64,000 nucleotides of DNA from positions 62,001 through 126,000 of the IMG/VR virus record IMGVR_UViG_3300050132_000038; one strand, written 5' to 3'. Below, in pieces: positions 630 to 53,230 of the stretch (positions are counted from its first letter, which is position 1; each line of letters begins with the position of its first letter). The translations under genes were made by a program, and so were the position numbers. The notes under the pieces are model-generated. The model was not told the DNA's origin, made no database searches, and was given only the letters and a program-made list of their open reading frames with translations.

Positions 630-1328
630 TTACTTGGTAACAGACTGCGCACGCATTTCCGCATTGGCTTTGATGATAGCGGCGTGTGCTTGAATTTCTT
701 CGGCGGTCTTCATCTGCGGCGTTACCGTCATCAGCACACCCTTCGAGTCCAACAAAGCGAGAGGGCGTTGAACAACGGCTGCTGCTACGGGTGCCGGAGT
801 AACGACCGAGCCAGGAGCAACTGCTTGGCCGGTATCAGGATCAATTAGAGGACGACCGGCTGCAACCCACTCGGCCTTCGTCATTGGGCAACCACGGCGA
901 ATGGTGGCCCCATCTTTGCGACGATCAATAACACCACCCGACACAGAGATCGAATAGCGAATGTCGTCATTGGTACAGAGAAGGGCCATTGCTGCGGAGT
1001 GCTCGCCCATGTTCCATTCTTCACGCGCGTTCTTCAACATCGTGCAATTGGAATCTGTCCAGGTCGAACCAAGGGCTACACCGAACGACATACCGGTCGC
1101 ACCCATCGACGAACTACCCATACACGTATCATTTGAAGAGGTGAGCGAGGGAGCGAATGCCGAGGAGGTTGCGTAGCGAACGGTACTATCAGAAACAGGG
1201 GCGAACAACAGGGAACCACCTTGTGCTGCACTCTGCGTACTTGCATTCGATGCCGTGCTTGCAGTCTGTGCAAAGGCTACAGCTGACGATAGAGAAAGTA
1301 CAGTTGCTACTAGGAGCTTCTTATTCAT
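630..1328 (-). CDS. Exported Cys-containing protein
   Basis: Signal peptide MNKKLLVATVLSLSSAVAFA; core TCMGSSSMG...DSNCTMLKNAREEWNMG...ALLC. Confidence 0.75.
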   Translation of the reverse strand: MNKKLLVATVLSLSSAVAFAQTASTASNASTQSAAQGGSLLFAPVSDSTVRYATSSAFAPSLTSSNDTCMGSSSMGATGMSFGVALGSTWTDSNCTMLKNAREEWNMGEHSAAMALLCTNDDIRYSISVSGGVIDRRKDGATIRRGCPMTKAEWVAAGRPLIDPDTGQAVAPGSVVTPAPVAAAVVQRPLALLDSKGVLMTVTPQMKTAEEIQAHAAIIKANAEMRAQSVTK

Positions 1329-1362
1329 GTTTTCGTCCAATTAAGGAGGGCAAATGTGAAAA

Positions 1363-2347: not shown

Positions 2348-2422
2348 TGGCAGGGGAGGAAGGGATCGAACCTTCGCGTGCTAGTGTCAAAGACTAGTGC
2401 CGTACCACTTGGCTACTCCCCT
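2348..2422 (-). tRNA. tRNA-Gln (anticodon TTG)
   Basis: Cloverleaf: AGGGGAG/CTCCCCT acceptor, GCC/GGC D stem, CTAGT-CT TTG AC-ACTAG anticodon arm, GAAGG TTCGATC CCTTC T arm, encoded CCA. Confidence 0.95.
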
Positions 2423-27450: not shown

Positions 27451-27663
27451 TTAATCTTCAAGTCGAAGACGTGCGTCCTTAACCCGATCGAGATTGCGTT
27501 CACTTAGATTCTCTATGATGAAGCACCCATGACCGTCCTCATGCGAAAGGGTAAGGCCATGCACACGACATAGTTCGTCGTACGCCGCTATGAAGTCCTC
27601 AACCTTCTGCGGAGACTCCACTCGCGCACCCTGTATTTTATCCCACCGCTTAACTTTACTCAT
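27451..27663 (-). CDS. Hypothetical protein
   Basis: Packed ORF; LSHEDGHGCFIIE. Confidence 0.65.
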   Translation of the reverse strand: MSKVKRWDKIQGARVESPQKVEDFIAAYDELCRVHGLTLSHEDGHGCFIIENLSERNLDRVKDARLRLED

Positions 27664-28370
27664 GATCTTTCCTTTGCCAGAGTAGAGACTACAGGTAGTC
27701 CATCTTTACGAGGGCGGCCTCGGGACAGCTCGTCAATTCGACGGTTAGCTTTTGGTGCCACGGTAGCACGGTACTCCTCGCCACCCAGTACCCAGCCTGC
27801 GTGAGCATACTTGATAATTGTCTTGGCGTGCTGCTCAGATACAGACTCCGCTACAAGCTTCGAGTATGCCGCCTGGCGCGCGAAGGGAGTATTGCCCAAG
27901 GCCCAGTACTCAGCGTGAGGCGTCAAATTTGTATCTAGGGAAACGCCTAGGTTGTGTAGCTGACTAGATGCTTTGCTAGGTAACTGATGCGTAGCAGCCT
28001 CTGCGTCAATTAGAACAGAGCAACGTAGGAACCACTCAGCGGAGTCTACAACGGTAGCGCGATAACGGCCTTGCCACAGCGTGCCACTCCGCTTGTAGGC
28101 CCTATTGTATAGAGCAACATATGTGCGGCCTACACCTTGAATTGTTTTCGATAAACTTTGATCGTTACCTGGGGTAACAAGTAGTTGAACACCGCTAGGG
28201 AGCATAGAGTACGCATGGATCTTCAAGTCGTGGCGTTTGGCATTCGCTACGAGCAGATTATAAAACTTTGCTTGATCGGCCAGGGCAGGGAACGGATTGA
28301 CTCCAGATATGGTGTCAAGAATCACGTACTGTACTTCGTTAGGAATGAATAGACGGGGAAGGCGTGCCAT
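27660..28370 (-). CDS. RAYT/Y1 transposase-like protein, catalytically degenerate
   Basis: MARLPRL, IHAY.ML, LLVTP, YNRAYKRSGTLWQGRY, YWALGNTP, GWVLG, RGRPRK are retained; HUH reads SGVQLL and the catalytic Tyr is absent. Confidence 0.85.
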   Translation of the reverse strand: MARLPRLFIPNEVQYVILDTISGVNPFPALADQAKFYNLLVANAKRHDLKIHAYSMLPSGVQLLVTPGNDQSLSKTIQGVGRTYVALYNRAYKRSGTLWQGRYRATVVDSAEWFLRCSVLIDAEAATHQLPSKASSQLHNLGVSLDTNLTPHAEYWALGNTPFARQAAYSKLVAESVSEQHAKTIIKYAHAGWVLGGEEYRATVAPKANRRIDELSRGRPRKDGLPVVSTLAKERS

Positions 28371-29418: not shown

Positions 29419-29841
29419 TTAGGTTTTCTTAACTAGCTTAGAGAGCAGGGATGATACTTTCGGTTTGTCTTTCTTGTGTAGACGCGCTTCGAGTTGCTTC
29501 TTTGGGGTCTTCGCCTTGTTGAAGTCTTGCTCAGGTCCATCACCGAGCCACTCCTCAGTCGGAGTGCAGTCGCGGTCGCTGAATCGTAGATACTCTGTTT
29601 GCATCCGCAGGAGTTTATCAGGGAAGGGATTAGGATTACTGTAACGTTCCGTAAACAAGATGGTCTTCTCGAGGCTTCGACTGAAAGCATTCTGAAACAT
29701 GGAGTTGATCGTCTTTCCCGAGAGGGGAACAGGTTGTAGCTCAGGTTCCGGTTTTACTGTTCTACCAGTAGGGCTTAATCCTTTTTCTTTCAACATAGCC
29801 ATTATGCGTTGCTGGTGCGGCTGAATTTTATCGTCGGTCAT
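29419..29841 (-). CDS. Hypothetical protein
   Basis: TGTAAATA at 29871-29878 upstream. Confidence 0.65.
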   Translation of the reverse strand: MTDDKIQPHQQRIMAMLKEKGLSPTGRTVKPEPELQPVPLSGKTINSMFQNAFSRSLEKTILFTERYSNPNPFPDKLLRMQTEYLRFSDRDCTPTEEWLGDGPEQDFNKAKTPKKQLEARLHKKDKPKVSSLLSKLVKKT

Positions 29842-30083
29842 CGCCTACTCCGTTGGTGGGGTATATGCTATATTTACAGGAATTCGCATATCGCATTTTT
29901 AATGTGTAAGAGGAATTCACACATTCCACAATTTTACACAAATCCAAAACACAGGATTTATCTTTAGACTGACAGATAGCCATAGAATTATAGAACAAGG
30001 CTCTGTTACGTATCTTAGCCTCGGGACTAGCCGGATTGATAGCTGTATTGATCTCTCCTAAACTAGTTAAAGAGGAACTCAAA

Positions 30084-31136
30084 ATGGCTGATCTTGTTAA
30101 TCCCACGGTACTGAGCACTGGCGGTCTCATGGGTAGTGGTTATGGCAACAACGGTGGCTTGATGGGCGGGGATGGTATTGGCTCCTTGCTTATCGGTGCT
30201 CTTCTGTTTGGCGGTGGCCTGGGTGGTGGCTTTGGTGGCCGTAATGGTTTGGCTGCTACTGCTGGGGATACTGTGACTACTGCTCATCTTCAATCGGCAT
30301 TGAATCAACAAACCCAGAGCCAGAATACCAACAACATTCTGCAAAGCTTGGCTACCATCCAGCAGCTGATCCCTGAGAACGAGGGTCGCGTTCAAGCGGC
30401 TATCGCCGGTGCTCAGATCGCTTTGGGCAATCAAGCTTCACAAGGTCAACTGGCGGCAGCTAACCAAGCTTCGCAAGGGCAGTTGCAAGTTGCTGCTTCC
30501 ACGGCCCTGCTGACCAACAACGTTGCAGACGCACGCCACAACATCAACGATAACATCCATGCAGGTGTGCTTTCCCAACTCGCAGGGCAAGCCGCGATTA
30601 CGGCAGGTGTAGTTGAAGCCCGCAAGGATATTAACGATAACATTCACCTGGGTCGCTCGGAAGCAGCAAACGGTTTCTCTAGTGCTTCGTTGCAAGCTGC
30701 AAACTATAGTGCCGCAACCCAGTTGGGTATTGCTAACCTGGGTCTTCAGACTGCTCAACAAACGTCTGTTCTTACGGATCAAATCCGTGATGACGGCGAT
30801 AAGACTCGTTCCCTCATTGTTGCTCAGTACGAAGCTAACCTGCAACGGTTGCTCACGACTGCTCAGAATGAGATTATCGAACTGCGCGGTGATCGCAACA
30901 TGCGTGAAGCACATCGTGGCACGGAAGTTACTGTTAGCCAGAACGTGTCGCAAGCTTCTGCTCAGGCTCAACAGCAACAACAGCAACAACAGCAGTTTGC
31001 TATCCTTTCGCAAATTGCAGCTAGCTTGTCCGGTCTTACCCAGATCGCTCATGCTACGAACCAGAATGTGATTTCTGGTAACAGTGGTGCTGTGCAGACT
31101 GGTCCCCAGAATGCCAATCCCACGAACGTCGCCTAG
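30084..31136 (+). CDS. Gly-rich/hydrophobic N-terminus plus Gln/Asn/Ala-rich coiled-coil protein
   Basis: AGAGGA RBS; GSLLIGALLFGGGLGGGFGG; DGDKTRSLIVAQYE; poly-Q; C-terminal NQNVISGNSGAVQTGPQNANPTNVA. Confidence 0.85.
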   Translation: MADLVNPTVLSTGGLMGSGYGNNGGLMGGDGIGSLLIGALLFGGGLGGGFGGRNGLAATAGDTVTTAHLQSALNQQTQSQNTNNILQSLATIQQLIPENEGRVQAAIAGAQIALGNQASQGQLAAANQASQGQLQVAASTALLTNNVADARHNINDNIHAGVLSQLAGQAAITAGVVEARKDINDNIHLGRSEAANGFSSASLQAANYSAATQLGIANLGLQTAQQTSVLTDQIRDDGDKTRSLIVAQYEANLQRLLTTAQNEIIELRGDRNMREAHRGTEVTVSQNVSQASAQAQQQQQQQQQFAILSQIAASLSGLTQIAHATNQNVISGNSGAVQTGPQNANPTNVA

Positions 31137-31167
31137 TCTGTAAGTAGATTAGGTGTATGGAGGATCA

Positions 31168-31196
31168 GGGGTTCAGTCTCACGAGGGTTGAACCCC
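31168..31196 (+). terminator. Intergenic hairpin
   Basis: ggggttcagtctc-acga-gggttgaacccc. Confidence 0.65.
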
Positions 31197-31218
31197 ATCT
31201 GAAAGACGGAGGACTAAT

Positions 31219-31401
31219 ATGTTAAGCGCACCACTGTTTGCAGCTCGTCAGGACCAGCTGTTGTTTCAACTACGTAACATGAGCCTGCTTAGTGCTATGC
31301 GTCTGCAGGCGTCAAAAGCAACTAACCAGACTGTCATCACCGGCAACTACGGAGCGGTGCAGACGGGCTACCAGAACGCGAATCCTACGAACGTAGGTTG
31401 A
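31219..31401 (+). CDS. 60-aa protein sharing the C-terminal motif of 30084..31136
   Basis: GGAGG RBS; ends NQTVITGNYGAVQTGYQNANPTNVG. Confidence 0.75.
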   Translation: MLSAPLFAARQDQLLFQLRNMSLLSAMRLQASKATNQTVITGNYGAVQTGYQNANPTNVG

Positions 31402-31441
31402 ATTCATTTATACACACGTAAGTACCTTATAAGGAGTTATC

Positions 31442-31771
31442 ATGCCTAATGTTATTGGTGGTTCAATTCATGGGGACGGCCCCAGTGTGATTGGTGGATC
31501 GATTGGTGAGGAGCATCATTACGAAGGGGTGGCTACGCCCGCACCGGTGCGTACCTACGCGCAAACTATTGGTGATGGTGTTACCACAGTGTTTGCAATT
31601 ACTCACAACCTGGGAACTTTGGACACGCAGACTCAAGTGTACAATCCGATCACGGGTCTTCAAGTACCGCCGACGGCGTACACTGCTGTTCACACGAGTG
31701 CTAACGTTACGACGTTGACCTTCACCACAGCACCTGCTGCCGGTGCTGCACGGGCTGTTATCGAAGCCTAA
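31442..31771 (+). CDS. THNL-motif small beta protein with two VIGGSI repeats
   Basis: AQTIGDG...ITHNLGT.D. Confidence 0.8.
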   Translation: MPNVIGGSIHGDGPSVIGGSIGEEHHYEGVATPAPVRTYAQTIGDGVTTVFAITHNLGTLDTQTQVYNPITGLQVPPTAYTAVHTSANVTTLTFTTAPAAGAARAVIEA

Positions 31772-31772
31772 G

Positions 31773-31800
31773 TGAAGCCGGGAGGATCCTCCCGGCTTCA
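31773..31800. repeat. 28-bp perfect palindrome / hairpin
   Basis: TGAAGCCGGGAGGATCCTCCCGGCTTCA. Confidence 0.85.
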
Positions 31801-31852
31801 TCGTTAGACGCCAGTTCTCCCCACTGAGCCAGTTCCAATCTATGGAGTTACC

Positions 31853-32164
31853 ATGGCTGACGTTATTGGTGGTTCAATTAGCGGTGAAGGTCCTTCTGTT
31901 ACCGGCGGATCGATTGGTAGCGGATCAGGTACCAGTGGACCTGTAGTACCTACCGTACCAGTAGATGTAACTTCGTTCACCTTTAGTCAACCTACTCCTG
32001 CAGCCTCTTGGTTGATTACGCATAACTTAAATGGGTTCCCTTCGGTCACTACCACCGACTTAGCAGGTAATGTAATAGTTGGGCAGGTGCAGTATCTAAA
32101 CGCTAATACTGTATTGGTTGTATTCTCTACACCAGTAGCAGGGGTAGCATATTTGAATATGTAG
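31853..32164 (+). CDS. THNL-motif small beta protein with GGSI repeats
   Basis: VIGGSISGEGPSVTGGSIG; WLITHNLNGFPSV. Confidence 0.8.
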   Translation: MADVIGGSISGEGPSVTGGSIGSGSGTSGPVVPTVPVDVTSFTFSQPTPAASWLITHNLNGFPSVTTTDLAGNVIVGQVQYLNANTVLVVFSTPVAGVAYLNM

Positions 32165-32223
32165 TGATGTAAAAGAGCCTTATTGAGTTAGCAGCATTGA
32201 ATCTAACTTAATGGAGTTCTATC

Positions 32224-32622
32224 ATGGCACTTCAAATTTATGCAGCTCTTGGTCTGAACCAAAACCAGATCAATAGCATGGCTTTGGACAACCAAGCCAC
32301 AGCTCCCTTAACACCTGTTGTAGGGCAGATTTACTACAATACAGTTAGCAACACCCCATTTGTGTGGGACGGCACGGCCTGGACATCTATGTTCTCTACA
32401 GGCGGTGCGAGATTCGCGCAGACGATTGGCGATGGTGTAGCTCTATCCTATGCTATAACGCACAACTTGGGAACTCAGGATACAGTTGAATCAGTGTACT
32501 CATCAGCAGCCCCGTTCGCTGAGATCATATCTGTAATTCAGCATACAAGTATAAATACGACAACCTTCATCTTTACCATACCTCCTGTTCTTAACTCAAT
32601 TCGGGTTGTTATCCATTCGTGA
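32224..32622 (+). CDS. THNL-motif protein with fibre-type N-terminal module
   Basis: GQIYYNT...FVWDGTAW then AQTIGDG...ITHNLGTQD. Confidence 0.8.
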   Translation: MALQIYAALGLNQNQINSMALDNQATAPLTPVVGQIYYNTVSNTPFVWDGTAWTSMFSTGGARFAQTIGDGVALSYAITHNLGTQDTVESVYSSAAPFAEIISVIQHTSINTTTFIFTIPPVLNSIRVVIHS

Positions 32623-32680
32623 ACGTCTATCGAAATACCTAGCCTTCCTGATCGATAAATACTTTCTAGGAATTTCACAA

Positions 32681-32992
32681 ATGGCACGTAATGTAACCTT
32701 CACCGTAACAACCGCTCCTGCTGTACTCCCAGCTGGTGTAGCAGATGGTGCTATGCTGCTAATGCAGATTCTTAGTACGGACGCTACGCCAGTTGTAGTG
32801 GCCACCGCTAACGTACCTGCTCCTCTGCTGACTTATACGTTTACCGGTATCGAAGATGGATCGTACATCGCGAGTGTCACAGCGCTGGACTCTACAGGGG
32901 CACCTCTGGGTATAGCAGTACCCCAGCCGTTTGACGTATCTGATCTGTTGTTCAACCAACCGGTATCCCCTATCGCCATCGTGGTGACGTGA
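32681..32992 (+). CDS. Ig/FnIII-like beta-sandwich protein (tentative)
   Basis: YTFTGIEDGSYIASVTALDSTG pattern. Confidence 0.7.
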   Translation: MARNVTFTVTTAPAVLPAGVADGAMLLMQILSTDATPVVVATANVPAPLLTYTFTGIEDGSYIASVTALDSTGAPLGIAVPQPFDVSDLLFNQPVSPIAIVVT

Positions 32993-32993
32993 T

Positions 32994-33149
32994 ATGCCAG
33001 GGCCACTAGTACACCAGGTAGAAGATATTATCGAGGATGTGGTACACCTGGTAGAAGAGTTTGTAAAAGAGTTTGTAAAAGAGGTTGTGGAGTGTGTTGG
33101 GGGCTCGACCTACGCACAACCCATAACGTTGAACGTATCAATAGTCTGA
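32994..33149 (+). CDS. 51-aa Val/Glu-rich peptide (not in ORF track)
   Basis: MPGPLVHQVEDIIEDVVHLVEEFVKEFVKEVVECVGGSTYAQPITLNVSIV, coupled to the previous stop (TGA-T-ATG). Confidence 0.6.
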   Translation: MPGPLVHQVEDIIEDVVHLVEEFVKEFVKEVVECVGGSTYAQPITLNVSIV

Positions 33150-33156
33150 GGAGGAC

Positions 33157-33185
33157 AGGGCAGAAGCATTGCCCTTTCTCTTTTT
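33157..33185 (+). terminator. Rho-independent terminator
   Basis: agggca/tgccct stem plus T-rich tail. Confidence 0.55.
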
Positions 33186-33204
33186 AAGATAGTGGGAGGA
33201 AACT

Positions 33205-33405
33205 ATGAGAAGGCCCTGGGTGCCCCCAACACCAGAACCTAACCAACTTGAGAACTTGATTCAGCAACATCAGTGTTGCACCAATCGGAGTCCTAGCTTC
33301 CTTGAAGGTAATGGGTTGGCCTTACTTGCCGTTGCCTACTTGCTAGGGCGTAGTAGTGCTCCCCGTCCACAGGTGTGGATTATAGACGGAGCGATCAGGA
33401 GGTAA
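33205..33405 (+). CDS. Small protein with a hydrophobic segment
   Basis: GGGAGG RBS; GLALLAVAYLLG. Confidence 0.65.
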   Translation: MRRPWVPPTPEPNQLENLIQQHQCCTNRSPSFLEGNGLALLAVAYLLGRSSAPRPQVWIIDGAIRR

Positions 33406-33406
33406 T

Positions 33407-33616
33407 ATGTACCCGTACGGATTTGGTTTCGGTGGCTTTGGTGGCCCGTTCGTAGGAGGCTTTGGCTCCCCGTTCGGTTTTGGTTTCAATGGATTAGCGT
33501 TCCCCACTCCGTATGTGCGTCGGTCGTTCTTCCCTGGGCCGTTCCTTGGTGGGTACCTTGCACCATATGGACCCTACCTTGCAGCAAGTGGATGGGGTAG
33601 AGGTTGTCGTTGTTGA
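33407..33616 (+). CDS. Gly/Phe/Pro/Tyr-rich 69-aa protein
   Basis: AGGAGG RBS; GFGFGGFGGPF repeats, ends GRGCRC. Confidence 0.75.
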   Translation: MYPYGFGFGGFGGPFVGGFGSPFGFGFNGLAFPTPYVRRSFFPGPFLGGYLAPYGPYLAASGWGRGCRC

Positions 33617-33621
33617 AAGCA

Positions 33622-33664
33622 GAAGAGGGCCACCTAACTTTTATTAGCTTAGGTGGCCCTCTTC
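33622..33664. terminator. Hairpin between convergent genes
   Basis: 16-bp stem gaagagggccacctaa/ttaggtggccctcttc. Confidence 0.85.
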
Positions 33665-33670
33665 CATTTG

Positions 33671-34246
33671 TTACTCAGTCTTCAATTCAGGATTCAGATG
33701 CAGTGGAATCTGAAACTCACTCAGGGGAATCATCACCACTGCCCCTGCTGCGTTCTTAACCTCAACGTTCTTCCAGTTATTATACAAGTCGCGGTCGAAC
33801 TTCTTGACTACCTCAACGGGTTCTCCGTTGTAGAATCCCTTATCTGCCAGTAGCTGCGAACCATAGGCTACTGTATAGTAGTCGTCCTGCTCCTCCTCAG
33901 GATCAATGATACTGAATTTAGGCTTTGGTCGGGTGCTTTCCAGGTAGGACCGCAATTCAAGCGCAAGCTCTTCACTAACGAACTCATACTCGGTATCACT
34001 CTTGCGGGCTGTTTGCCACGAGTAACCTGCTAGGCGGTCATCGAAGTAGATTGCCATGAGGCCAACCCACGTATCAGTGCAATTCCACTTGATTACATAG
34101 TAAGCCTTAACACGGTCATCGAAGTCCTTTGGCAGGTCGTGGTAATAGAGGTCAGGCGGCAAGCCTAGCTCTCGGGCAAGCTCCTCACCGTCTGCGTACT
34201 GGGAATCACTGCGGTCTACATTGCGTAGTGCGTCGATTAGTTTCAT
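33671..34246 (-). CDS. Hypothetical phage protein
   Basis: [10 protein letters not shown] motif. Confidence 0.75.
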
Positions 34247-34692
34247 TTTCTGCTGGCCTCCACAAGGGTGCGAATACGATCTTTAAATTCTTTATGTGAC
34301 TTGCTGTGTGCTTCCGGATCGCGTGCGGCAGCCTCGTAGCCTACGGCGAAGAAGTAAGCCTGTAGCATTATGCTTTCCACCTCCTCTTCTACAGAAGGAA
34401 CTTTAACCACAGAGGCAATTGCCTCTGTGGGCCTAGGTTTTATTACCCAGGAGCTGTTTGCGATTGTGTTGATAATCGATTGCACAGTAGAGCACTGTTC
34501 GGCCTCCTCATCGCTAACCTCTATGTTGAATTCATCTTCGAGAGCCATGATGAGTTCAGCACAGTCCAGACTATCAGCCCCTAAGTCATCGATGATCCTA
34601 GCGTCGTTCTTTATCTCAAGACGGGAGGTACCGAGTTGGAACTCGATAACTTTCTTAACCCGCTCTTCAATGCCTTCTTTAGTATCGTTCAT
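34243..34692 (-). CDS. acpP: Acyl carrier protein with C-terminal extension
   Basis: [12 protein letters not shown]...[36 protein letters not shown]; phosphopantetheinylation Ser intact. Confidence 0.88.
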
Positions 34693-50660: not shown

Positions 50661-51617
50661 TTACTCCTTGGTTAGAGTTGGTTGGCAGTAAGCAATTTCT
50701 AAGAAGGCTGCCAAGGACGCCGCGGTCGCCCTAAGTTCTTGCTGTCGCTCTTTAGACTGTCCCGCTAGTATTCGAATCCGTTTTATATTAGGTGCTGAAA
50801 ACGGTTTAACTTTAAATGGGGCCTCGACCTGTAAGGCAATTGCGGTCATAGGGACCTGCTCTAAGTCATCCATGCTATAAATTTTGTGAAGGTAGCCGCT
50901 ATTCTTCTTAGCGGCCCTCTCTACTTTTTCTACAGTAACGATGGCAGGTTTAACTTTCTTAATGACCCGGGACAGGTGCCCCTCAGAGGTTACTTGAGAA
51001 TAGCCGAGCAGATTACATTTCTCGATCTTCCATAGCTCATCTGACTTGTAGTTTATGTAGTGGAAAGCGGGATCAGAATTATTTGCCAGTGTGCCCGCGT
51101 AGAAGGTGTTTCTAAATCGTAATTCTCTGTGCAGGTGTCCAGCTACAGTAACAGCATCACTCTTCTTCATTCCTACCTTAAAGTCCAAGCCTAACTTCTT
51201 TTCAACTTCGGGGACAGCAGCGTGGACTACATTCAGAGCATCGAACATTAGTCGCGCATGAGGCCACGGATTAAAGTTTACGTGAGCTCCGTCTATGTCT
51301 ACCACTTCGGCCCTAGAACTGAAGACGGTAACGTTATGAGCTCTGAGCAGATCTAGGCTACAGGAGGATGCTTCCCGATTGTTAAAGAGATCATGATTAC
51401 CAGCGATGATCCAGAAGCGTAGGTCATTGTACTCGGCAAATAGTTTTCGTAGCTTGCGGACAACGGTAAGGTCACCATCCTCTACAAGGTCCCCGTACTG
51501 AAAGATATTTTGTATCCTCCTCTTTCTCGCAATGTCACAGACGTGAGAAATCCTGAACAGGCGCGATTTCATGTTGGTAGGTTCGAGATGCAGATCTGCT
51601 ATCCCTAGTGCTCTCAT
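50661..51617 (-). CDS. Second SbcD/Mre11-like metallophosphoesterase
   Basis: ADLHL, YGDLVE, AGNHD, AGHLH, YAGTL. Confidence 0.75.
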   Translation of the reverse strand: MRALGIADLHLEPTNMKSRLFRISHVCDIARKRRIQNIFQYGDLVEDGDLTVVRKLRKLFAEYNDLRFWIIAGNHDLFNNREASSCSLDLLRAHNVTVFSSRAEVVDIDGAHVNFNPWPHARLMFDALNVVHAAVPEVEKKLGLDFKVGMKKSDAVTVAGHLHRELRFRNTFYAGTLANNSDPAFHYINYKSDELWKIEKCNLLGYSQVTSEGHLSRVIKKVKPAIVTVEKVERAAKKNSGYLHKIYSMDDLEQVPMTAIALQVEAPFKVKPFSAPNIKRIRILAGQSKERQQELRATAASLAAFLEIAYCQPTLTKE

Positions 51618-52921
51618 TTCGTTTGGTCCACGTAAGTAGGTTTAGAGAAGTCGAGCTTCAGTGTGGCAGCGGCCTGGGCTAATCTCTTCGACTCCCGCGT
51701 TTTAGTCAAGATACCTGATAGCTCTTCCAAGTATAACGCCGCCCCCTTCGCAGATGATAACCACCGCTTAGTATGATCCTTCGTATTGGTCAACAGCCCT
51801 GCCTGCCCCTGCAGCATAATCAGATGCGCGTCAGGTGAAATGTCTAAACTTAGGTTCAATGATTCCGCCCACGTTACTAACCGAGGATCCCACGCAACCT
51901 TCTTCTTCCCTGCGTTAGTCTTGTACTCCTCTTCCCATAGCTTCATCATCCCTCGATGCTGTAGAGCAAATGGATTGTCTACAGTCACCATGTAGGATAA
52001 GCACGTACGCTCTATAGCATAGGTCATCAACGCTTCCACCGCACCTTTCCAGCCACGCTCAGGATACTCCCGCTTCACGTAGTCATACAAACCTTTGATA
52101 GTAGGCTTGGCCCCTAAACTCCAATAGTTCTTTAGATAGTAGTTACTCACAGTAAGATCGAACCGCAATCGTTTCTCCAGGTCCTGCTCCTCTTCACTAC
52201 CCATTGCCTTCTCGTTATCACGCTTCTCCTGTGCTTTATTATAAAGACACAGATGCATTAGCTTGTTACCCTTCCCTAACTTATCGCCTTTAGCATAGAT
52301 CGCCAAGGCTATTGAATCATCGTACTGATCCCCTACGCTACGCTTCATAGCTAATTCTTGCAACAGTGATATGTAACGTTCTCCGGTGTGCAGCCGCGTC
52401 TCATACATAAAATACCAACGATCAATCAATTCTCTCATTAGCTTTTCATTCTTCAATGGTGAACTATACTGCGCGAACGTTACTGAATGAATGTTGATAT
52501 TCCCAATCTTTACCTGCTGCGTTAGCCGGGTAACGTCTACACCCTTCTTACCCAGGAACTCTAGTACAAAGTAGAATATATCCTGCACCTGTGTCCGTAG
52601 CTTCAAGTTACCGAACGTATTGTCCCCACTGAACACTGATGCTGGATTAGCTAACACATTGAAGAACCATGTGGATCCTGCACGACCATCCTGTCGTAGT
52701 GTTACTGTTATTGCTGAACCTAGCTTCTTGAACTTCCCTGGGTTCATAATGAATATGATTCCCCCATCCTTATCGCGCAGTCCTCCATTCTTTTCCATTA
52801 CAGCCATTAGCTTCTTACTTTCCTTATCAGAGCATTCAACACCATTACTCTCGAAGGTCGTATCATCAACATCTAGGTCTGTTCCCATATTGATATTGTC
52901 CACCATTGCGTATGTCTTCAT
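51614..52921 (-). CDS. Rep_trans / phage gene II-X-like replication initiator homolog
   Basis: ANPASVFSGDNTFG, LCLYNKAQEKRDN (resembles the catalytic IYNKKQERKDN of pT181-family Rep), LRFDLTV. Confidence 0.65.
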   Translation of the reverse strand: MKTYAMVDNINMGTDLDVDDTTFESNGVECSDKESKKLMAVMEKNGGLRDKDGGIIFIMNPGKFKKLGSAITVTLRQDGRAGSTWFFNVLANPASVFSGDNTFGNLKLRTQVQDIFYFVLEFLGKKGVDVTRLTQQVKIGNINIHSVTFAQYSSPLKNEKLMRELIDRWYFMYETRLHTGERYISLLQELAMKRSVGDQYDDSIALAIYAKGDKLGKGNKLMHLCLYNKAQEKRDNEKAMGSEEEQDLEKRLRFDLTVSNYYLKNYWSLGAKPTIKGLYDYVKREYPERGWKGAVEALMTYAIERTCLSYMVTVDNPFALQHRGMMKLWEEEYKTNAGKKKVAWDPRLVTWAESLNLSLDISPDAHLIMLQGQAGLLTNTKDHTKRWLSSAKGAALYLEELSGILTKTRESKRLAQAAATLKLDFSKPTYVDQTK

Positions 52922-52950
52922 TGCCCTATCCCTTACCTTGATCTATGAAT

Positions 52951-53121
52951 CTACACATACCTAAACTATGTGTAGTCTATTTACATGCGTATTCGTTACC
53001 TGCGTATTCACCCTGAGTTAAACTATGTGTAACTATTCATGCAATTAATACACTTACTCATATATATTGATATTGTTATATTATACCCAAACTCAGGGTT
53101 ACTCATAGTTAAACTATGTGT
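52951..53121. repeat. Iteron-like direct repeats, inverted repeats and AT-rich core at the strand switch
   Basis: TAAACTATGTGT at 52962, 53019, 53110; ccctgagtt/aactcaggg at 53011 and 53090; ctacacata/tatgtgtag hairpin at 52951-52975. Confidence 0.8.
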
Positions 53122-53222: not shown

Positions 53223-53230
53223 TGTAAATA
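53223..53230 (+). promoter_or_regulatory. TGTAAATA promoter starting the + strand block
   Basis: Exact motif 28 nt before the ATG; its divergent partner is at 52978-52985 on the - strand. Confidence 0.65.

What the first reader, a model, noticed from the sequence alone, without database searches (positions are those of the whole stretch)
30084..33664. Counter-oriented nine-gene island of low-complexity and paralogous proteins: candidate self-assembling structure
Seen: the only + strand block within 53 kb of - strand genes, closed by a 16-bp hairpin, with good RBSs but no exact TGTAAATA at its head. It encodes a 350-aa Gly/hydrophobic plus Q/N/A-rich protein, a 60-aa partial echo of it, three THNL-domain paralogs, an Ig-like protein, a V/E-rich helix peptide, a membrane-like peptide and a GF/P/Y-rich peptide. 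None has an enzyme motif. The compositions recall spore-coat, prion-like and fibre proteins. Inference: one co-regulated structural system, such as a virion coat/whisker or an intracellular inclusion or protective matrix around progeny. I cannot assign it to a named system.
Basis: partly seen in the sequence, partly recalled or inferred. Interest (0 to 1): 0.82.

Follow-up and report, generated by a model that had tools for sequence, protein, structure and literature searches.

The report
Mobile phage cassette of fibre-like proteins
The nine-gene island is real and is one version of a previously undescribed gene cassette that moves between unrelated phages; it most likely builds an accessory fibre or adhesin complex, a long helical rod with small tail-fibre-like tips, but no experiment yet shows where it sits or what it does.

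Summary
Window 30084-33616 holds nine co-oriented genes. They form the only credible + strand coding block in about 53 kb of - strand genes. The genome is a 219-kb peat-metagenome jumbo phage distantly related to Ralstonia phage phiRSL1.

The island is not lineage-specific. Its first gene, g1, founds a large unnamed phage family (357 clusters at 50% identity). The partner families are rare and, wherever context is known, lie next to g1, in jumbo myoviruses, an E217-like myovirus and siphovirus-like contigs.

- **g1:** a disordered Gly-rich hydrophobic head, a helix of about 250 residues, a conserved polyQ tract and an extremely conserved 30-residue tail.
- **g2:** a free-standing copy of that tail.
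- **g3-g5:** a beta-sandwich found at the ends of tail fibres and head-decoration proteins.
- **Links:** one relative fuses a g2-like motif to that sandwich, and a short motif is shared by g1, g2, g3 and g4.

Best reading (confidence about 0.4): a separately transcribed accessory virion fibre or adhesin module. Rivals are a membrane-anchored envelope system, a non-virion matrix, and hitch-hiking neighbours. No proteomic or RNA evidence exists. It is a new variant of a known kind, of moderate-to-high interest.

The parts
29842..30083 (.). Divergent regulatory region at the island head. It contains TGTAAATA on the - strand (29871-29878, serving the - gene 29419-29841), an inverted repeat GGAAT/ATTCC (29912-29927), the conserved box TAGAATTATAGAACAAGG (29983-30000), and a sigma-70-like pair of hexamers (30036-30064).
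   Evidence: The inverted repeat and the box are conserved upstream of g1 in related contigs L002 and L006. A 3-mismatch copy of the box heads the - block at 52936-52953.
30084..31136 (+). g1, the founder of the cassette (350 aa). It has a disordered Gly-rich hydrophobic N-terminus (residues 1-65, with a glycine-zipper-like segment at 32-50), one long helix (66-318), a conserved polyQ tract, and an ultra-conserved C-terminal tail.
   Evidence: 158 homologues. 357 cluster representatives in the deep profile search. AF2 model, pLDDT above 90 for residues 100-260. Alignments A1 and A3. No Pfam, PDB or Foldseek hit.
31168..31200 (+). Hairpin after g1.
   Evidence: dG -18.6 kcal/mol, z -2.8.
31219..31401 (+). 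g2 (60 aa): an amphipathic helix plus a free-standing copy of the g1 C-terminal tail.
   Evidence: g2-type genes follow g1 in L002, L006, L008, L022 and L025.
31442..31771 (+). g3 (109 aa): two N-terminal 'V-I-G-G-S-I' motifs plus a THNL beta-sandwich.
   Evidence: PHROG 2647 (head decoration), 38707 and 16122. Orthologues in L002, L007 and L014. Motif scan.
31773..31800 (+). Perfect 14+14 palindrome (hairpin) after g3.
   Evidence: dG -27 kcal/mol, z -6.0.
31853..32164 (+). g4 (103 aa): the same N-terminal double motif plus a second type of THNL beta-sandwich. Its first 78 nt, including the ribosome-binding site, are 77% identical to those of g3.
   Evidence: PHROG 30556 and 10272. Direct repeat D1. 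Orthologues in L002, L008, L020, L022, L023 and L024. L024 fuses a g2-like motif to this domain.
32224..32622 (+). g5 (132 aa): a miniature tail fibre, with an Mtd_N-like N-terminal three-strand motif plus a THNL beta-sandwich.
   Evidence: AF2 model. Foldseek BFVD hits to tail-fibre proteins, E 3e-7 and weaker. PHROG 8309, 38707 and 2647. 17 clusters only, all with known context lying beside g1. Absent in a relative about 90% identical.
32681..32992 (+). g6 (103 aa): a probably all-beta protein with the C-terminal tail F-N-Q-P-x-x-P-h-x-h-x-V-T.
   Evidence: Orthologues in L002 and L006. Weak HMM link to the 97-114 aa 'Ig2' proteins of L007 and L022. 8 clusters, no Pfam. Fold not tested.
32994..33149 (+). 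g7 (51 aa): an acidic V/E-rich helix with a Q-P-x-T-L-N-V tail; its start overlaps the g6 stop.
   Evidence: The only relative is a divergent 53-aa ORF in L006.
33157..33185 (+). Intrinsic-terminator-like hairpin plus T-run after g7.
   Evidence: dG -15 kcal/mol.
33205..33405 (+). g8 (66 aa): a P/R/Q-rich peptide with one hydrophobic helix.
   Evidence: Weak coding score, -0.11. Its C-terminal half is conserved in the L002 96-aa and L024 108-aa ORFs.
33407..33616 (+). g9 (69 aa): 28% Gly, 17% Phe, 13% Pro, 9% Tyr, with a C-terminal G-W-G..C.C motif.
   Evidence: Orthologues in L002, L006, L008 and L025, and a Tyr-rich variant in L007 and L022. The nearest Atlas neighbours are Gly/Tyr keratin-associated proteins, by composition only (score 0.72).
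33622..33664 (.). 16-bp perfect hairpin between the island and the convergent - gene 33671-34246.
   Evidence: dG -33.3 kcal/mol, z -6.5.

Best explanation
The island is the jumbo-phage version of a mobile, separately transcribed accessory cassette. The cassette most likely encodes a multi-protein fibre or adhesin complex displayed on the virion.

**Proposed assembly (inferred).**
- g1 supplies the shaft, a rod of about 250 helical residues.
- The variable or Gly-rich N-terminus of g1 is the anchor. Its ultra-conserved C-terminal tail is a docking and oligomerisation element.
- g2 carries a copy of that tail.
- g3 and g4 carry degenerate copies of the tail motif at their N-termini and join at that end. 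This hangs small tail-fibre-type beta-sandwich tips on the rod.
- g5 is a free miniature fibre.
- g6 and g7 carry a Q-P..h.h.h tail. Together with the aromatic/Gly-rich, Cys-tailed g9 they are accessory or cementing subunits.
- The hairpins after g1, g3 and g7 would set the stoichiometry.

**Shown:** gene reality, family membership, synteny, the folds of g1 and g5, the shared motifs, and the natural fusion.

**Inferred:** co-assembly, virion location, adhesin role and timing.
For: 1. The beta-sandwich of g3-g5 matches the C-terminal ends of proteins annotated as head decoration, virion structural or tail fibre. The support is PHROG 2647, 16122 and 2824, AR9 and PBS1 virion proteins and Sundance and Myrna decoration proteins, and Foldseek BFVD hits at E 3e-7 to 1e-4 to Mtd_N-domain, PBS1, Trina, Stf-repeat and collagen-like fibres.
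2. The g5 N-terminus matches tail-fibre N-terminal motifs.
3. g1 is modelled with confidence as one long helix with disordered ends. Its N-terminal region varies between lineages while its last 46 residues show about 80% mean column identity across the alignment of 32 family members.
4. A Rosetta-stone fusion in L024 joins a g2-like motif to a g4-type domain.
5. The heptapeptide pattern has six matches in all six frames of the 64-kb window. All six lie in the g1 and g2 C-termini and the g3 and g4 N-termini.
6. Partner families are seen only beside g1: g5 in 7 of 7 known contexts, g9 in 7 of 7, g6 in 3 of 3.
7. The cassette or g1 often lies at the distal end of tail-fibre or late operons. Examples are L008, L016 (directly before a 913-aa collagen-like tail fibre), L020, L023, the Lelliottia prophage L026, phiPLPE and At2.
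8. No protein has a signal peptide or an enzyme domain.
Against: - There is no virion proteomics for any member. In the phiPLPE record, gp34 and gp35 carry 'confirmed by MS' but the g1 homologue gp38 does not (weak evidence).
- The g1 helix has no clear heptad periodicity. There is only a family-averaged 3.64-residue signal, with 9 of 300 shuffles as strong.
- g1 has a borderline transmembrane-like glycine-zipper segment.
- In 10 of about 27 loci g1 is paired with a divergent RHH-type regulator. In some phages it sits among replication genes (KLER1-1, L013, L017). Both features are more typical of morons than of virion parts.
- Small partners are 50-85% identical across phages with unrelated virions, so any anchor must be portable.
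- The motif in item 5 was defined after seeing the sequences.
Confidence: 0.4

Rival explanations
1. A membrane-anchored envelope system that is not part of the virion. g1 inserts into the inner membrane through its glycine-zipper segment, and its long helix spans the periplasm or lines the cytoplasmic face, as in TolA, an i-spanin or holin T. The conserved tail binds a conserved partner. The system would act in lysis control, superinfection exclusion or DNA entry. The RHH protein keeps a potentially harmful membrane protein under tight control.
For: - Glycine-zipper segment with KD19 = 1.65, conserved in composition across the family.
- A divergent RHH-like gene lies upstream of g1 in L003, L008, L014, L015, L017, L018, L020, L021, L025 and phiPLPE. 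Its Atlas neighbours are CopG/RHH families.
- g1 abuts lysis genes in L008, L021, L023 and At2.
- The cassette transfers freely between unrelated virion types.
Against: - The partners carry tail-fibre-type domains and no signal peptides, so they could not reach the periplasm by normal export.
- Phages carrying g1 have their own holin, endolysin and spanin (L008, L021).
- There is no PADLOC or Pfam lysis-family hit.
- The hydrophobic segment is only borderline for a transmembrane helix.
Confidence: 0.2
2. A self-assembling structure made in or released from the infected cell and independent of the virion. g1 would form filaments (rod plus Gly-rich head, like an intermediate filament). The Gly/aromatic/Cys peptide g9 would be a cross-linking matrix, like keratin-associated proteins. 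The beta-sandwich proteins would be surface adhesins. The function would be a scaffold, a condensate or a protective or adhesive matrix.
For: - Low-complexity composition of g1, g8, g9 and the Q/P-rich 180-189 aa proteins of L007 and L022.
- The nearest Atlas neighbours of g9 are Gly/Tyr keratin-associated proteins.
- Self-containment would explain easy transfer between unrelated phages.
- Shared short terminal peptides are suited to co-assembly.
Against: The evidence is purely compositional. The Atlas score of 0.72 is below the level at which hits are meaningful. g1 alone is the commonest form. No periodicity typical of intermediate-filament coiled coils was found.
Confidence: 0.12
3. Not one system. 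g1 (with or without g2) is an independent mobile gene, and the THNL, g6 and g9 genes are separate accessory fibre genes that accumulate at the same insertion hot spot.
For: - g1 occurs alone in about half of the loci.
- g5 is missing in a near relative.
- Gene order differs between the window and L002.
- Four hairpins split the island.
- THNL gene pairs occur without g1 after the lysin gene in Streptococcus phage T12.
Against: - Partner families are rare (17, 8 and few clusters among 5.8 billion) and were never seen away from g1 where context is known.
- The order g1-g2-g4'-g5'-g9' recurs in unrelated backbones (L008, L022).
- There is a g2-motif/THNL fusion, and motifs are shared between families.
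Confidence: 0.15
4. Packaged internal or ejected proteins. The shared terminal peptides would be targeting signals for loading into the capsid or tail, and g1 would be a membrane-active pilot protein, like phiX174 H or a tape measure.
For: - g1 has no Cys, a Gly-rich hydrophobic head and a long Q-rich helix.
- Unrelated cassette proteins share terminal peptides.
Against: - There is no sequence or profile similarity to any solved ejection or pilot protein.
- Folded beta-sandwich tips are unlikely cargo for a tail channel.
- The module is dispensable and mobile.
Confidence: 0.06

Closest known systems
Multi-protein phage fibres built from separate shaft and tip proteins, and non-essential whiskers or decorations (T4 long tail fibre gp34-37, T4 fibritin Wac, Hoc; comparison from general knowledge)
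   Same: A rod-like shaft protein has a conserved C-terminal assembly element. Small distal beta-sandwich binding domains are supplied by separate genes. The set is non-enzymatic and dispensable, and it is encoded apart from the core structural operon.
   Different: There is no sequence or fold match of g1 to fibritin or to any solved fibre. g1 shows no clear heptad repeat and has a hydrophobic glycine-zipper head. The cassette moves between unrelated virion types and often brings its own RHH regulator. Virion location is unproven.
C-terminal beta-sandwich of phage head-decoration, virion structural and tail-fibre proteins (PHROG 2647, 16122, 2824, 38707; AR9 and PBS1 virion proteins; Sundance and Myrna decoration proteins; Mtd_N-containing fibres)
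   Same: g3-g5 share this domain at sequence level (E down to 1e-19) and at predicted-fold level. g5 also shares the N-terminal fibre motif.
   Different: Here the domain stands almost alone, in proteins of 103-132 aa without a shaft. In the known proteins it ends polypeptides of 300-1,100 aa.
Iodobacter phage phiPLPE gp38 'putative tail-fiber protein' with gp37
   Same: gp38 is a true g1-family member (HMM E 2e-50). gp37 is a member of the divergent RHH-like family (E 1e-19). The pair lies right after a tail-fibre gene.
   Different: The 'tail-fiber' label is an unverified annotation, and no MS note is attached to gp38. There are no THNL, g9 or g6 partners. Its C-terminal tail is a divergent variant.
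Keratin intermediate filaments plus Gly/Tyr keratin-associated proteins (analogy only)
   Same: The architecture is a Gly-rich head, a long helical rod and a highly conserved rod end. It is accompanied by a small Gly/aromatic/Cys peptide.
   Different: There is no homology. The Atlas score of 0.72 reflects composition. No heptad pattern was found. The organisms are unrelated.
Inner-membrane-anchored helical envelope proteins (i-spanin Rz, T4 holin T, TolA; from general knowledge)
   Same: There is an N-terminal hydrophobic segment followed by a long helix and a small conserved C-terminal element. g1 is frequently adjacent to lysis cassettes.
   Different: There is no family match. The host phages have their own spanins. 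The partner proteins lack export signals.

Membership tests
Phage tail-fibre / decoration C-terminal beta-sandwich ('THNL' domain; PHROG 2647, 16122, 38707, 30556) | Significant profile match of the domain | tested here: met
   g3 scores 2.9e-9 and g5 1.1e-9 to PHROG 2647. g5 scores 1.4e-19 to PHROG 38707. g4 scores 1.8e-14 to PHROG 30556.
Phage tail-fibre / decoration C-terminal beta-sandwich ('THNL' domain; PHROG 2647, 16122, 38707, 30556) | Beta-sandwich fold resembling fibre ends | tested here: met
   AF2 model of g5 has pLDDT 85-94 over residues 63-131. There are 57 BFVD matches at E <= 1e-3, led by tail-fibre proteins. PDB matches are only weak (R2 pyocin fibre, E 0.08).
Phage tail-fibre / decoration C-terminal beta-sandwich ('THNL' domain; PHROG 2647, 16122, 38707, 30556) | Presence in purified virions | not testable with these tools
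   Only annotations of distant relatives are available (AR9 and PBS1 'virion structural protein').
Trimeric coiled-coil fibre shaft (fibritin-like) | Long uninterrupted alpha-helix | tested here: met
   AF2 predicts a helix over residues 66-318, with pLDDT above 90 for 100-260.
Trimeric coiled-coil fibre shaft (fibritin-like) | Heptad (3.5-residue) hydrophobic periodicity | tested here: inconclusive
   The single sequence shows no signal (200 of 500 shuffles as strong). The family-averaged profile peaks at 3.64 residues with 9 of 300 shuffles as strong.
Trimeric coiled-coil fibre shaft (fibritin-like) | Sequence or fold similarity to a solved fibre | tested here: not met
   No PDB sequence hit with E < 0.01 and no Foldseek hit.
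Holin / spanin / lysis proteins | Match to a lysis family, or a clear transmembrane helix plus the expected size | tested here: not met
   No Pfam, PHROG or PADLOC lysis hit for any island protein. The hydrophobic segment of g1 is borderline. Neighbouring phages carry their own holin, lysozyme and Rz.
Anti-phage defence / toxin-antitoxin cassette | Match to known defence or toxin families | tested here: not met
   PADLOC gives only a spurious 14-bit hit. The RHH gene is divergent rather than co-directional with g1.
Ribbon-helix-helix regulator (for the divergent partner gene in other phages; absent from the window) | RHH family match | tested here: inconclusive
   No Pfam hit. Atlas feature neighbours at 0.90-0.94 include RHH_1, RHH_3, CopG, NikA-like and TacA1 clusters.
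Single operon (one co-transcribed unit) | One promoter, no internal terminators, RNA evidence | tested here: inconclusive
   The genes are co-oriented with short gaps and coupled starts. However, there are three internal hairpins, one followed by a T-run. No RNA run was listed.

The most novel reading that the evidence does not exclude
The cassette is a portable, self-sufficient assembly kit that builds a non-virion structure. g1 would form membrane-anchored or free filaments, cross-linked by Gly/aromatic/Cys peptides and studded with adhesin domains. Short shared terminal peptides would act as a common assembly code. The structure would be made by many unrelated soil, peat and freshwater phages, for example to tether, coat or protect progeny or to remodel the host envelope.
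Probability: 0.2. Interest if true: 0.85.

Novelty: new variant of a known kind. Interest (0 to 1): 0.6.

Why it matters
- **An unnamed family:** g1 defines a large, wholly unannotated phage protein family. It has 357 clusters at 50% identity, no Pfam, PHROG or NCBIfam model, and no named member beyond one unverified 'tail-fiber' label.
- **A travelling cassette:** g1 carries a small set of partner genes across jumbo myoviruses, small myoviruses and siphoviruses.
- **If it is a plug-in fibre or adhesin kit:** it would show how phages with unrelated virions can acquire the same surface appendage as one unit. It would also supply a compact docking peptide useful for phage display or engineering.
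- **If it is a membrane or matrix system:** it would be a new kind of phage accessory structure.
- **Testability:** cultured carriers exist (phiPLPE, Acinetobacter phage At2, Pararheinheimera phage KLER1-1, a Lelliottia prophage), so the question can be tested directly.

Tried and rejected
- **DNA similarity:** the island has no DNA match among isolate phages.
- **Family libraries:** Pfam, NCBIfam and PADLOC give nothing above noise for any island protein.
- **g1 structure searches:** the PDB profile search and Foldseek on the g1 model found nothing.
- **Locus scans:** The search for related loci with the full g1 alignment failed because polyQ patterns saturated the scan. The core-only alignment had no stretch conserved enough. 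A tail-only alignment worked.
- **RNA evidence:** no RNA runs were listed, so transcription could not be examined.
- **Literature:** a search for KLER1-1 found nothing. The phiPLPE-group comparative paper (PMC3391216) says nothing about gp38.
- **Curli-like or YadA-head-like reading of the g1 tail:** considered from memory only and not pursued, because there is a single repeat and no profile support.
- **Holin role for g1:** rejected because carrier phages have their own holins.
- **Defence-system reading:** rejected for lack of any PADLOC match.
- **Spurious ORFs:** the - strand ORF 29828-30130 and the antisense ORFs inside g1 were rejected as genes. Coding scores are negative for two of the three; 30063-30434 scores 0.12, below the 0.21 of g1 in whose conserved sequence it lies.

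Full report
**Source and setting.** The window belongs to IMG/VR contig IMGVR_UViG_3300050132_000038 (218,861 bp), from peat metagenomes.
- Its GyrB-like topoisomerase is 63% identical to that of Ralstonia jumbo phage phiRSL1 and 56% identical to Burkholderia phage BcepSaruman.
- The window also holds an RtcB ligase, SbcD-like nucleases and an ACP-like gene.
- The host is unknown.
- Almost all genes from 1 to about 53 kb read on the - strand. Many are preceded by TGTAAATA, which occurs 21 times against 2 expected and follows gene orientation.

**Check of the observation.**
- Nine + strand ORFs with GGAG-type ribosome-binding sites fill 30084-33616.
- A codon model trained on 20 confident genes scores g1-g7 at 0.10-0.21 per codon, g9 at about 0 and g8 at -0.11. 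All other long + ORFs in the - strand region score at or near zero or below (at most 0.03), and the - ORFs overlapping five of them score 0.17-0.50.
- The closing 16-bp hairpin is exact, with dG -33.3 kcal/mol and z -6.5.
- Three further hairpins follow g1, g3 and g7. The one after g3 is a perfect 28-nt palindrome. The one after g7 has a T-run and is the only one the terminator scan reports. The island may therefore be transcribed in graded segments rather than as one plain operon.
- The head region lacks a + strand TGTAAATA. It carries an inverted repeat and an 18-nt box that are conserved upstream of g1 in two related contigs. A 3-mismatch copy of the box lies at the head of the - strand block.
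- Island GC3 is 0.46 against 0.54 elsewhere.

**g1.**
- The 350-aa protein has 158 homologues in the 5.8-billion-protein set. A profile of its helical core finds 357 cluster representatives, all 128-575 aa, with no sign of domain fusions in the size range or match positions. None has a Pfam domain or an informative name, and the Atlas neighbours are viral hypothetical proteins.
- AlphaFold2 with a 60-sequence alignment gives one helix from residue 66 to 318, with pLDDT above 90 for 100-260 and disordered termini.
- Nothing in the PDB matches by sequence or by fold.
- The N-terminal 65 residues are Gly-rich, with a glycine-zipper-like hydrophobic stretch (KD19 = 1.65). Other lineages add 70-120 variable residues in front of it.
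- The most conserved part is the end: a polyQ tract, a short helix and a 30-residue tail. This segment shows about 80% mean column identity in proteins that are otherwise 35-50% identical.
- Heptad periodicity is not significant in the single sequence. The family-averaged profile peaks weakly at 3.64 residues.

**g2 to g9.**
- g2 (60 aa) is a helix plus a copy of the g1 tail.
- g3, g4 and g5 share a beta-sandwich with an invariant H-N-L (alignment A4). It matches the C-terminal ends of PHROG families annotated as head decoration or virion structural protein, and of AR9, PBS1, Sundance and Myrna proteins.
- The g5 model has a small three-strand motif plus a sandwich with pLDDT 85-94. It hits predicted structures of tail-fibre proteins in BFVD at E 3e-7 to 1e-4, and R-type pyocin fibres and tailspikes only weakly in the PDB.
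- g6 (103 aa) belongs to a family of 8 clusters with no Pfam hit. Its fold was not tested.
- g9 is 28% Gly and 17% Phe and has a Cys-containing end. Its Atlas neighbours, Gly/Tyr keratin-associated proteins at 0.72, reflect composition only.

**Synteny.** Context was recovered for about 27 g1 loci.

| Locus | Backbone or position | Cassette genes |
|---|---|---|
| L002 | same jumbo lineage, counter-oriented island | g1, g2, g4', g5', g3', g8', g9', g6' |
| L006 | same jumbo lineage, counter-oriented island | g1, g2, g9', g6', g7' |
| L024 | same jumbo lineage | g1, g4', g5', g8' |
| L022 | E217-like myovirus, counter-oriented between head and tail genes | g1, g2', g4', g5', a Tyr-rich g9 variant, a Q/P-rich 180-aa protein, a 97-aa beta protein |
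| L008, L023 | siphovirus-like, after the tail and lysis genes | g1, (g2), g4', g5', (g9') |
| L020 | unassigned backbone; after large Laminin_G/apiosidase-domain proteins (possible fibre genes, not scanned) | RHH, g1, g4', g5' |
| L007 | after the terminase gene | g1, g3', g9 variant, Q/P-rich protein, beta protein |
| L025 | contig of a Granulicella MAG | RHH, g1, g2, g9' |

- g1 stands alone, often with a divergent RHH-like gene, in L003, L017, L018, L021 and phiPLPE (gp37/gp38).
- g1 stands alone without that gene in KLER1-1, At2, L004, L013, L019, L026 and L027.
- The RHH-like gene is present in 10 loci in all.
- Partner families were never found away from g1 where context is known: g5 in 7 of 7, g9 in 7 of 7, g6 in 3 of 3.
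- A relative about 90% identical, in another peat sample, joins g4 directly to g6 and so lacks g5.

**Links between the proteins.**
- In L024 a 147-aa protein fuses a g2-like N-terminus, including the core of the tail motif, to a g4-type sandwich.
- A heptapeptide pattern drawn from the tail has six matches in all six reading frames of the window. They lie in the g1 tail, the g2 tail, twice at the g3 N-terminus and twice at the g4 N-terminus. The pattern was defined after seeing the sequences, so only its absence elsewhere is informative.
- The extreme C-termini of g6, g7, the Ig2 proteins and the Q/P-rich proteins share a Q-(V)-P-x-x-h-x-h-x-h tail. g1 and g2 end in Q-x-A-N-P-x-N-V.
- These short shared peptides and the fusion are the best evidence that the products act together.

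**Interpretation.** The tail-fibre-type end domains point to an accessory fibre or adhesin complex of the virion, with g1 as shaft and g2-g5 joined at its conserved end. So do the rod-like g1 with a variable front and conserved end, the frequent position at the distal end of tail-fibre or late operons, and the lack of export signals and enzymes. I hold this at about 0.4.
- **Against it:** there is no proteomic support, and phiPLPE gp38 carries no MS note while gp34 and gp35 do. The heptad signal is weak. g1 has a glycine-zipper segment. The RHH pairing and scattered positions look moron-like. The small partners are highly conserved across unrelated virions.
- **Rivals:** a membrane-anchored envelope system (0.2), hitch-hiking neighbours rather than a system (0.15), a non-virion self-assembling matrix (0.12), and packaged or ejected proteins (0.06).

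**Novelty.** No library or paper searched describes the g1 family or the cassette. The end domains are of a known kind. The rod protein, the shared terminal peptides and the portability of the whole set are new. I class it as a new variant of a known kind, with a 0.2 chance that it is something categorically different.

Noticed in passing
window 2348-2422 (-): The only tRNA in the window is tRNA-Gln(UUG), flanked by two TGTAAATA copies (2326-2333 and 2436-2443). g1 is 12.8% Gln, against 3.7% in 20 other genes, and uses CAA for 56% of its Gln codons against 42% elsewhere. The tRNA may therefore serve Q-rich genes such as g1.
   Followed up: partly
window, 21 sites (e.g. 2-9, 2906-2913, 29871-29878, 53223-53230): TGTAAATA is a strong promoter-like motif that follows gene orientation. 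It occurs 21 times against 2 expected; 19 copies are on the - strand in the - gene block and 2 are on the + strand after 53 kb.
   Followed up: partly
window 630-1340 (-); also L003 11367-11888, L022 12863-13384, L007 10446-11066: A secreted protein with a signal peptide and a conserved Cys-containing S-S-N-D-T-C-M-G...N-C..L-K-N-A core recurs in phages that carry g1. It lies 29 kb away in the window and inside or beside the cassette in L022 and L003 (HMM E 1.6e-18). Its function is unknown.
   Followed up: partly
L008 6674-6934 (-), L003 7687-7893 (-), L020 8690-8902 (-), L021 8673-8912 (-), phiPLPE gp37: A small RHH-like protein family with no Pfam model lies divergently upstream of g1 in 10 loci. 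It is absent from the jumbo lineage, where a conserved inverted repeat occupies the equivalent region.
   Followed up: partly
window 29983-30000 (+) and 52936-52953 (-): The 18-nt box TAGAATTATAGAACAAGG upstream of g1 has one other copy, with 3 mismatches, 15 nt before the first gene of the - block (51614-52921). It may be a second promoter class (1 of 100 shuffles gives two or more matches).
   Followed up: no
window 32100-32639, seen in run X4: A relative about 90% identical, in a different peat sample, has a contig that joins g4 to g6 with 51 other letters between. It therefore lacks g5.
   Followed up: partly
L030 (Streptococcus phage T12) 4614-5964: T12_61 has a g4-type THNL end and T12_62 a g5-like N-terminus. 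They sit directly after holin and lysin and before speA, and the same pair occurs in many S. pyogenes and S. dysgalactiae prophages. THNL pairs placed after the lysis genes are thus not confined to Gram-negative phages.
   Followed up: partly
L002 7344-7736 (-), L006 6352-6729 (-): In the two closest relatives, the gene divergent from g1 carries an Acb2/Tad1-hairpin (anti-CBASS/anti-Thoeris sponge) Pfam hit. The window's counterpart (29419-29841) has no such hit.
   Followed up: no
window 34243-34692 (-) and 27660-28370 (-): An acyl-carrier-protein-like gene (PP-binding, E 8e-12) lies just downstream of the island and is conserved at that position in L002 and L024. There is also a weak IS200-type Y1 transposase match, below the Pfam cutoff.
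   Followed up: no
window 31430-31507 vs 31841-31918: g3 and g4 share a 78-nt 5' segment, including the ribosome-binding site, at 77% identity, although their beta-sandwich parts are only distantly related. This suggests recombination or duplication of the N-terminal motif module.
   Followed up: no
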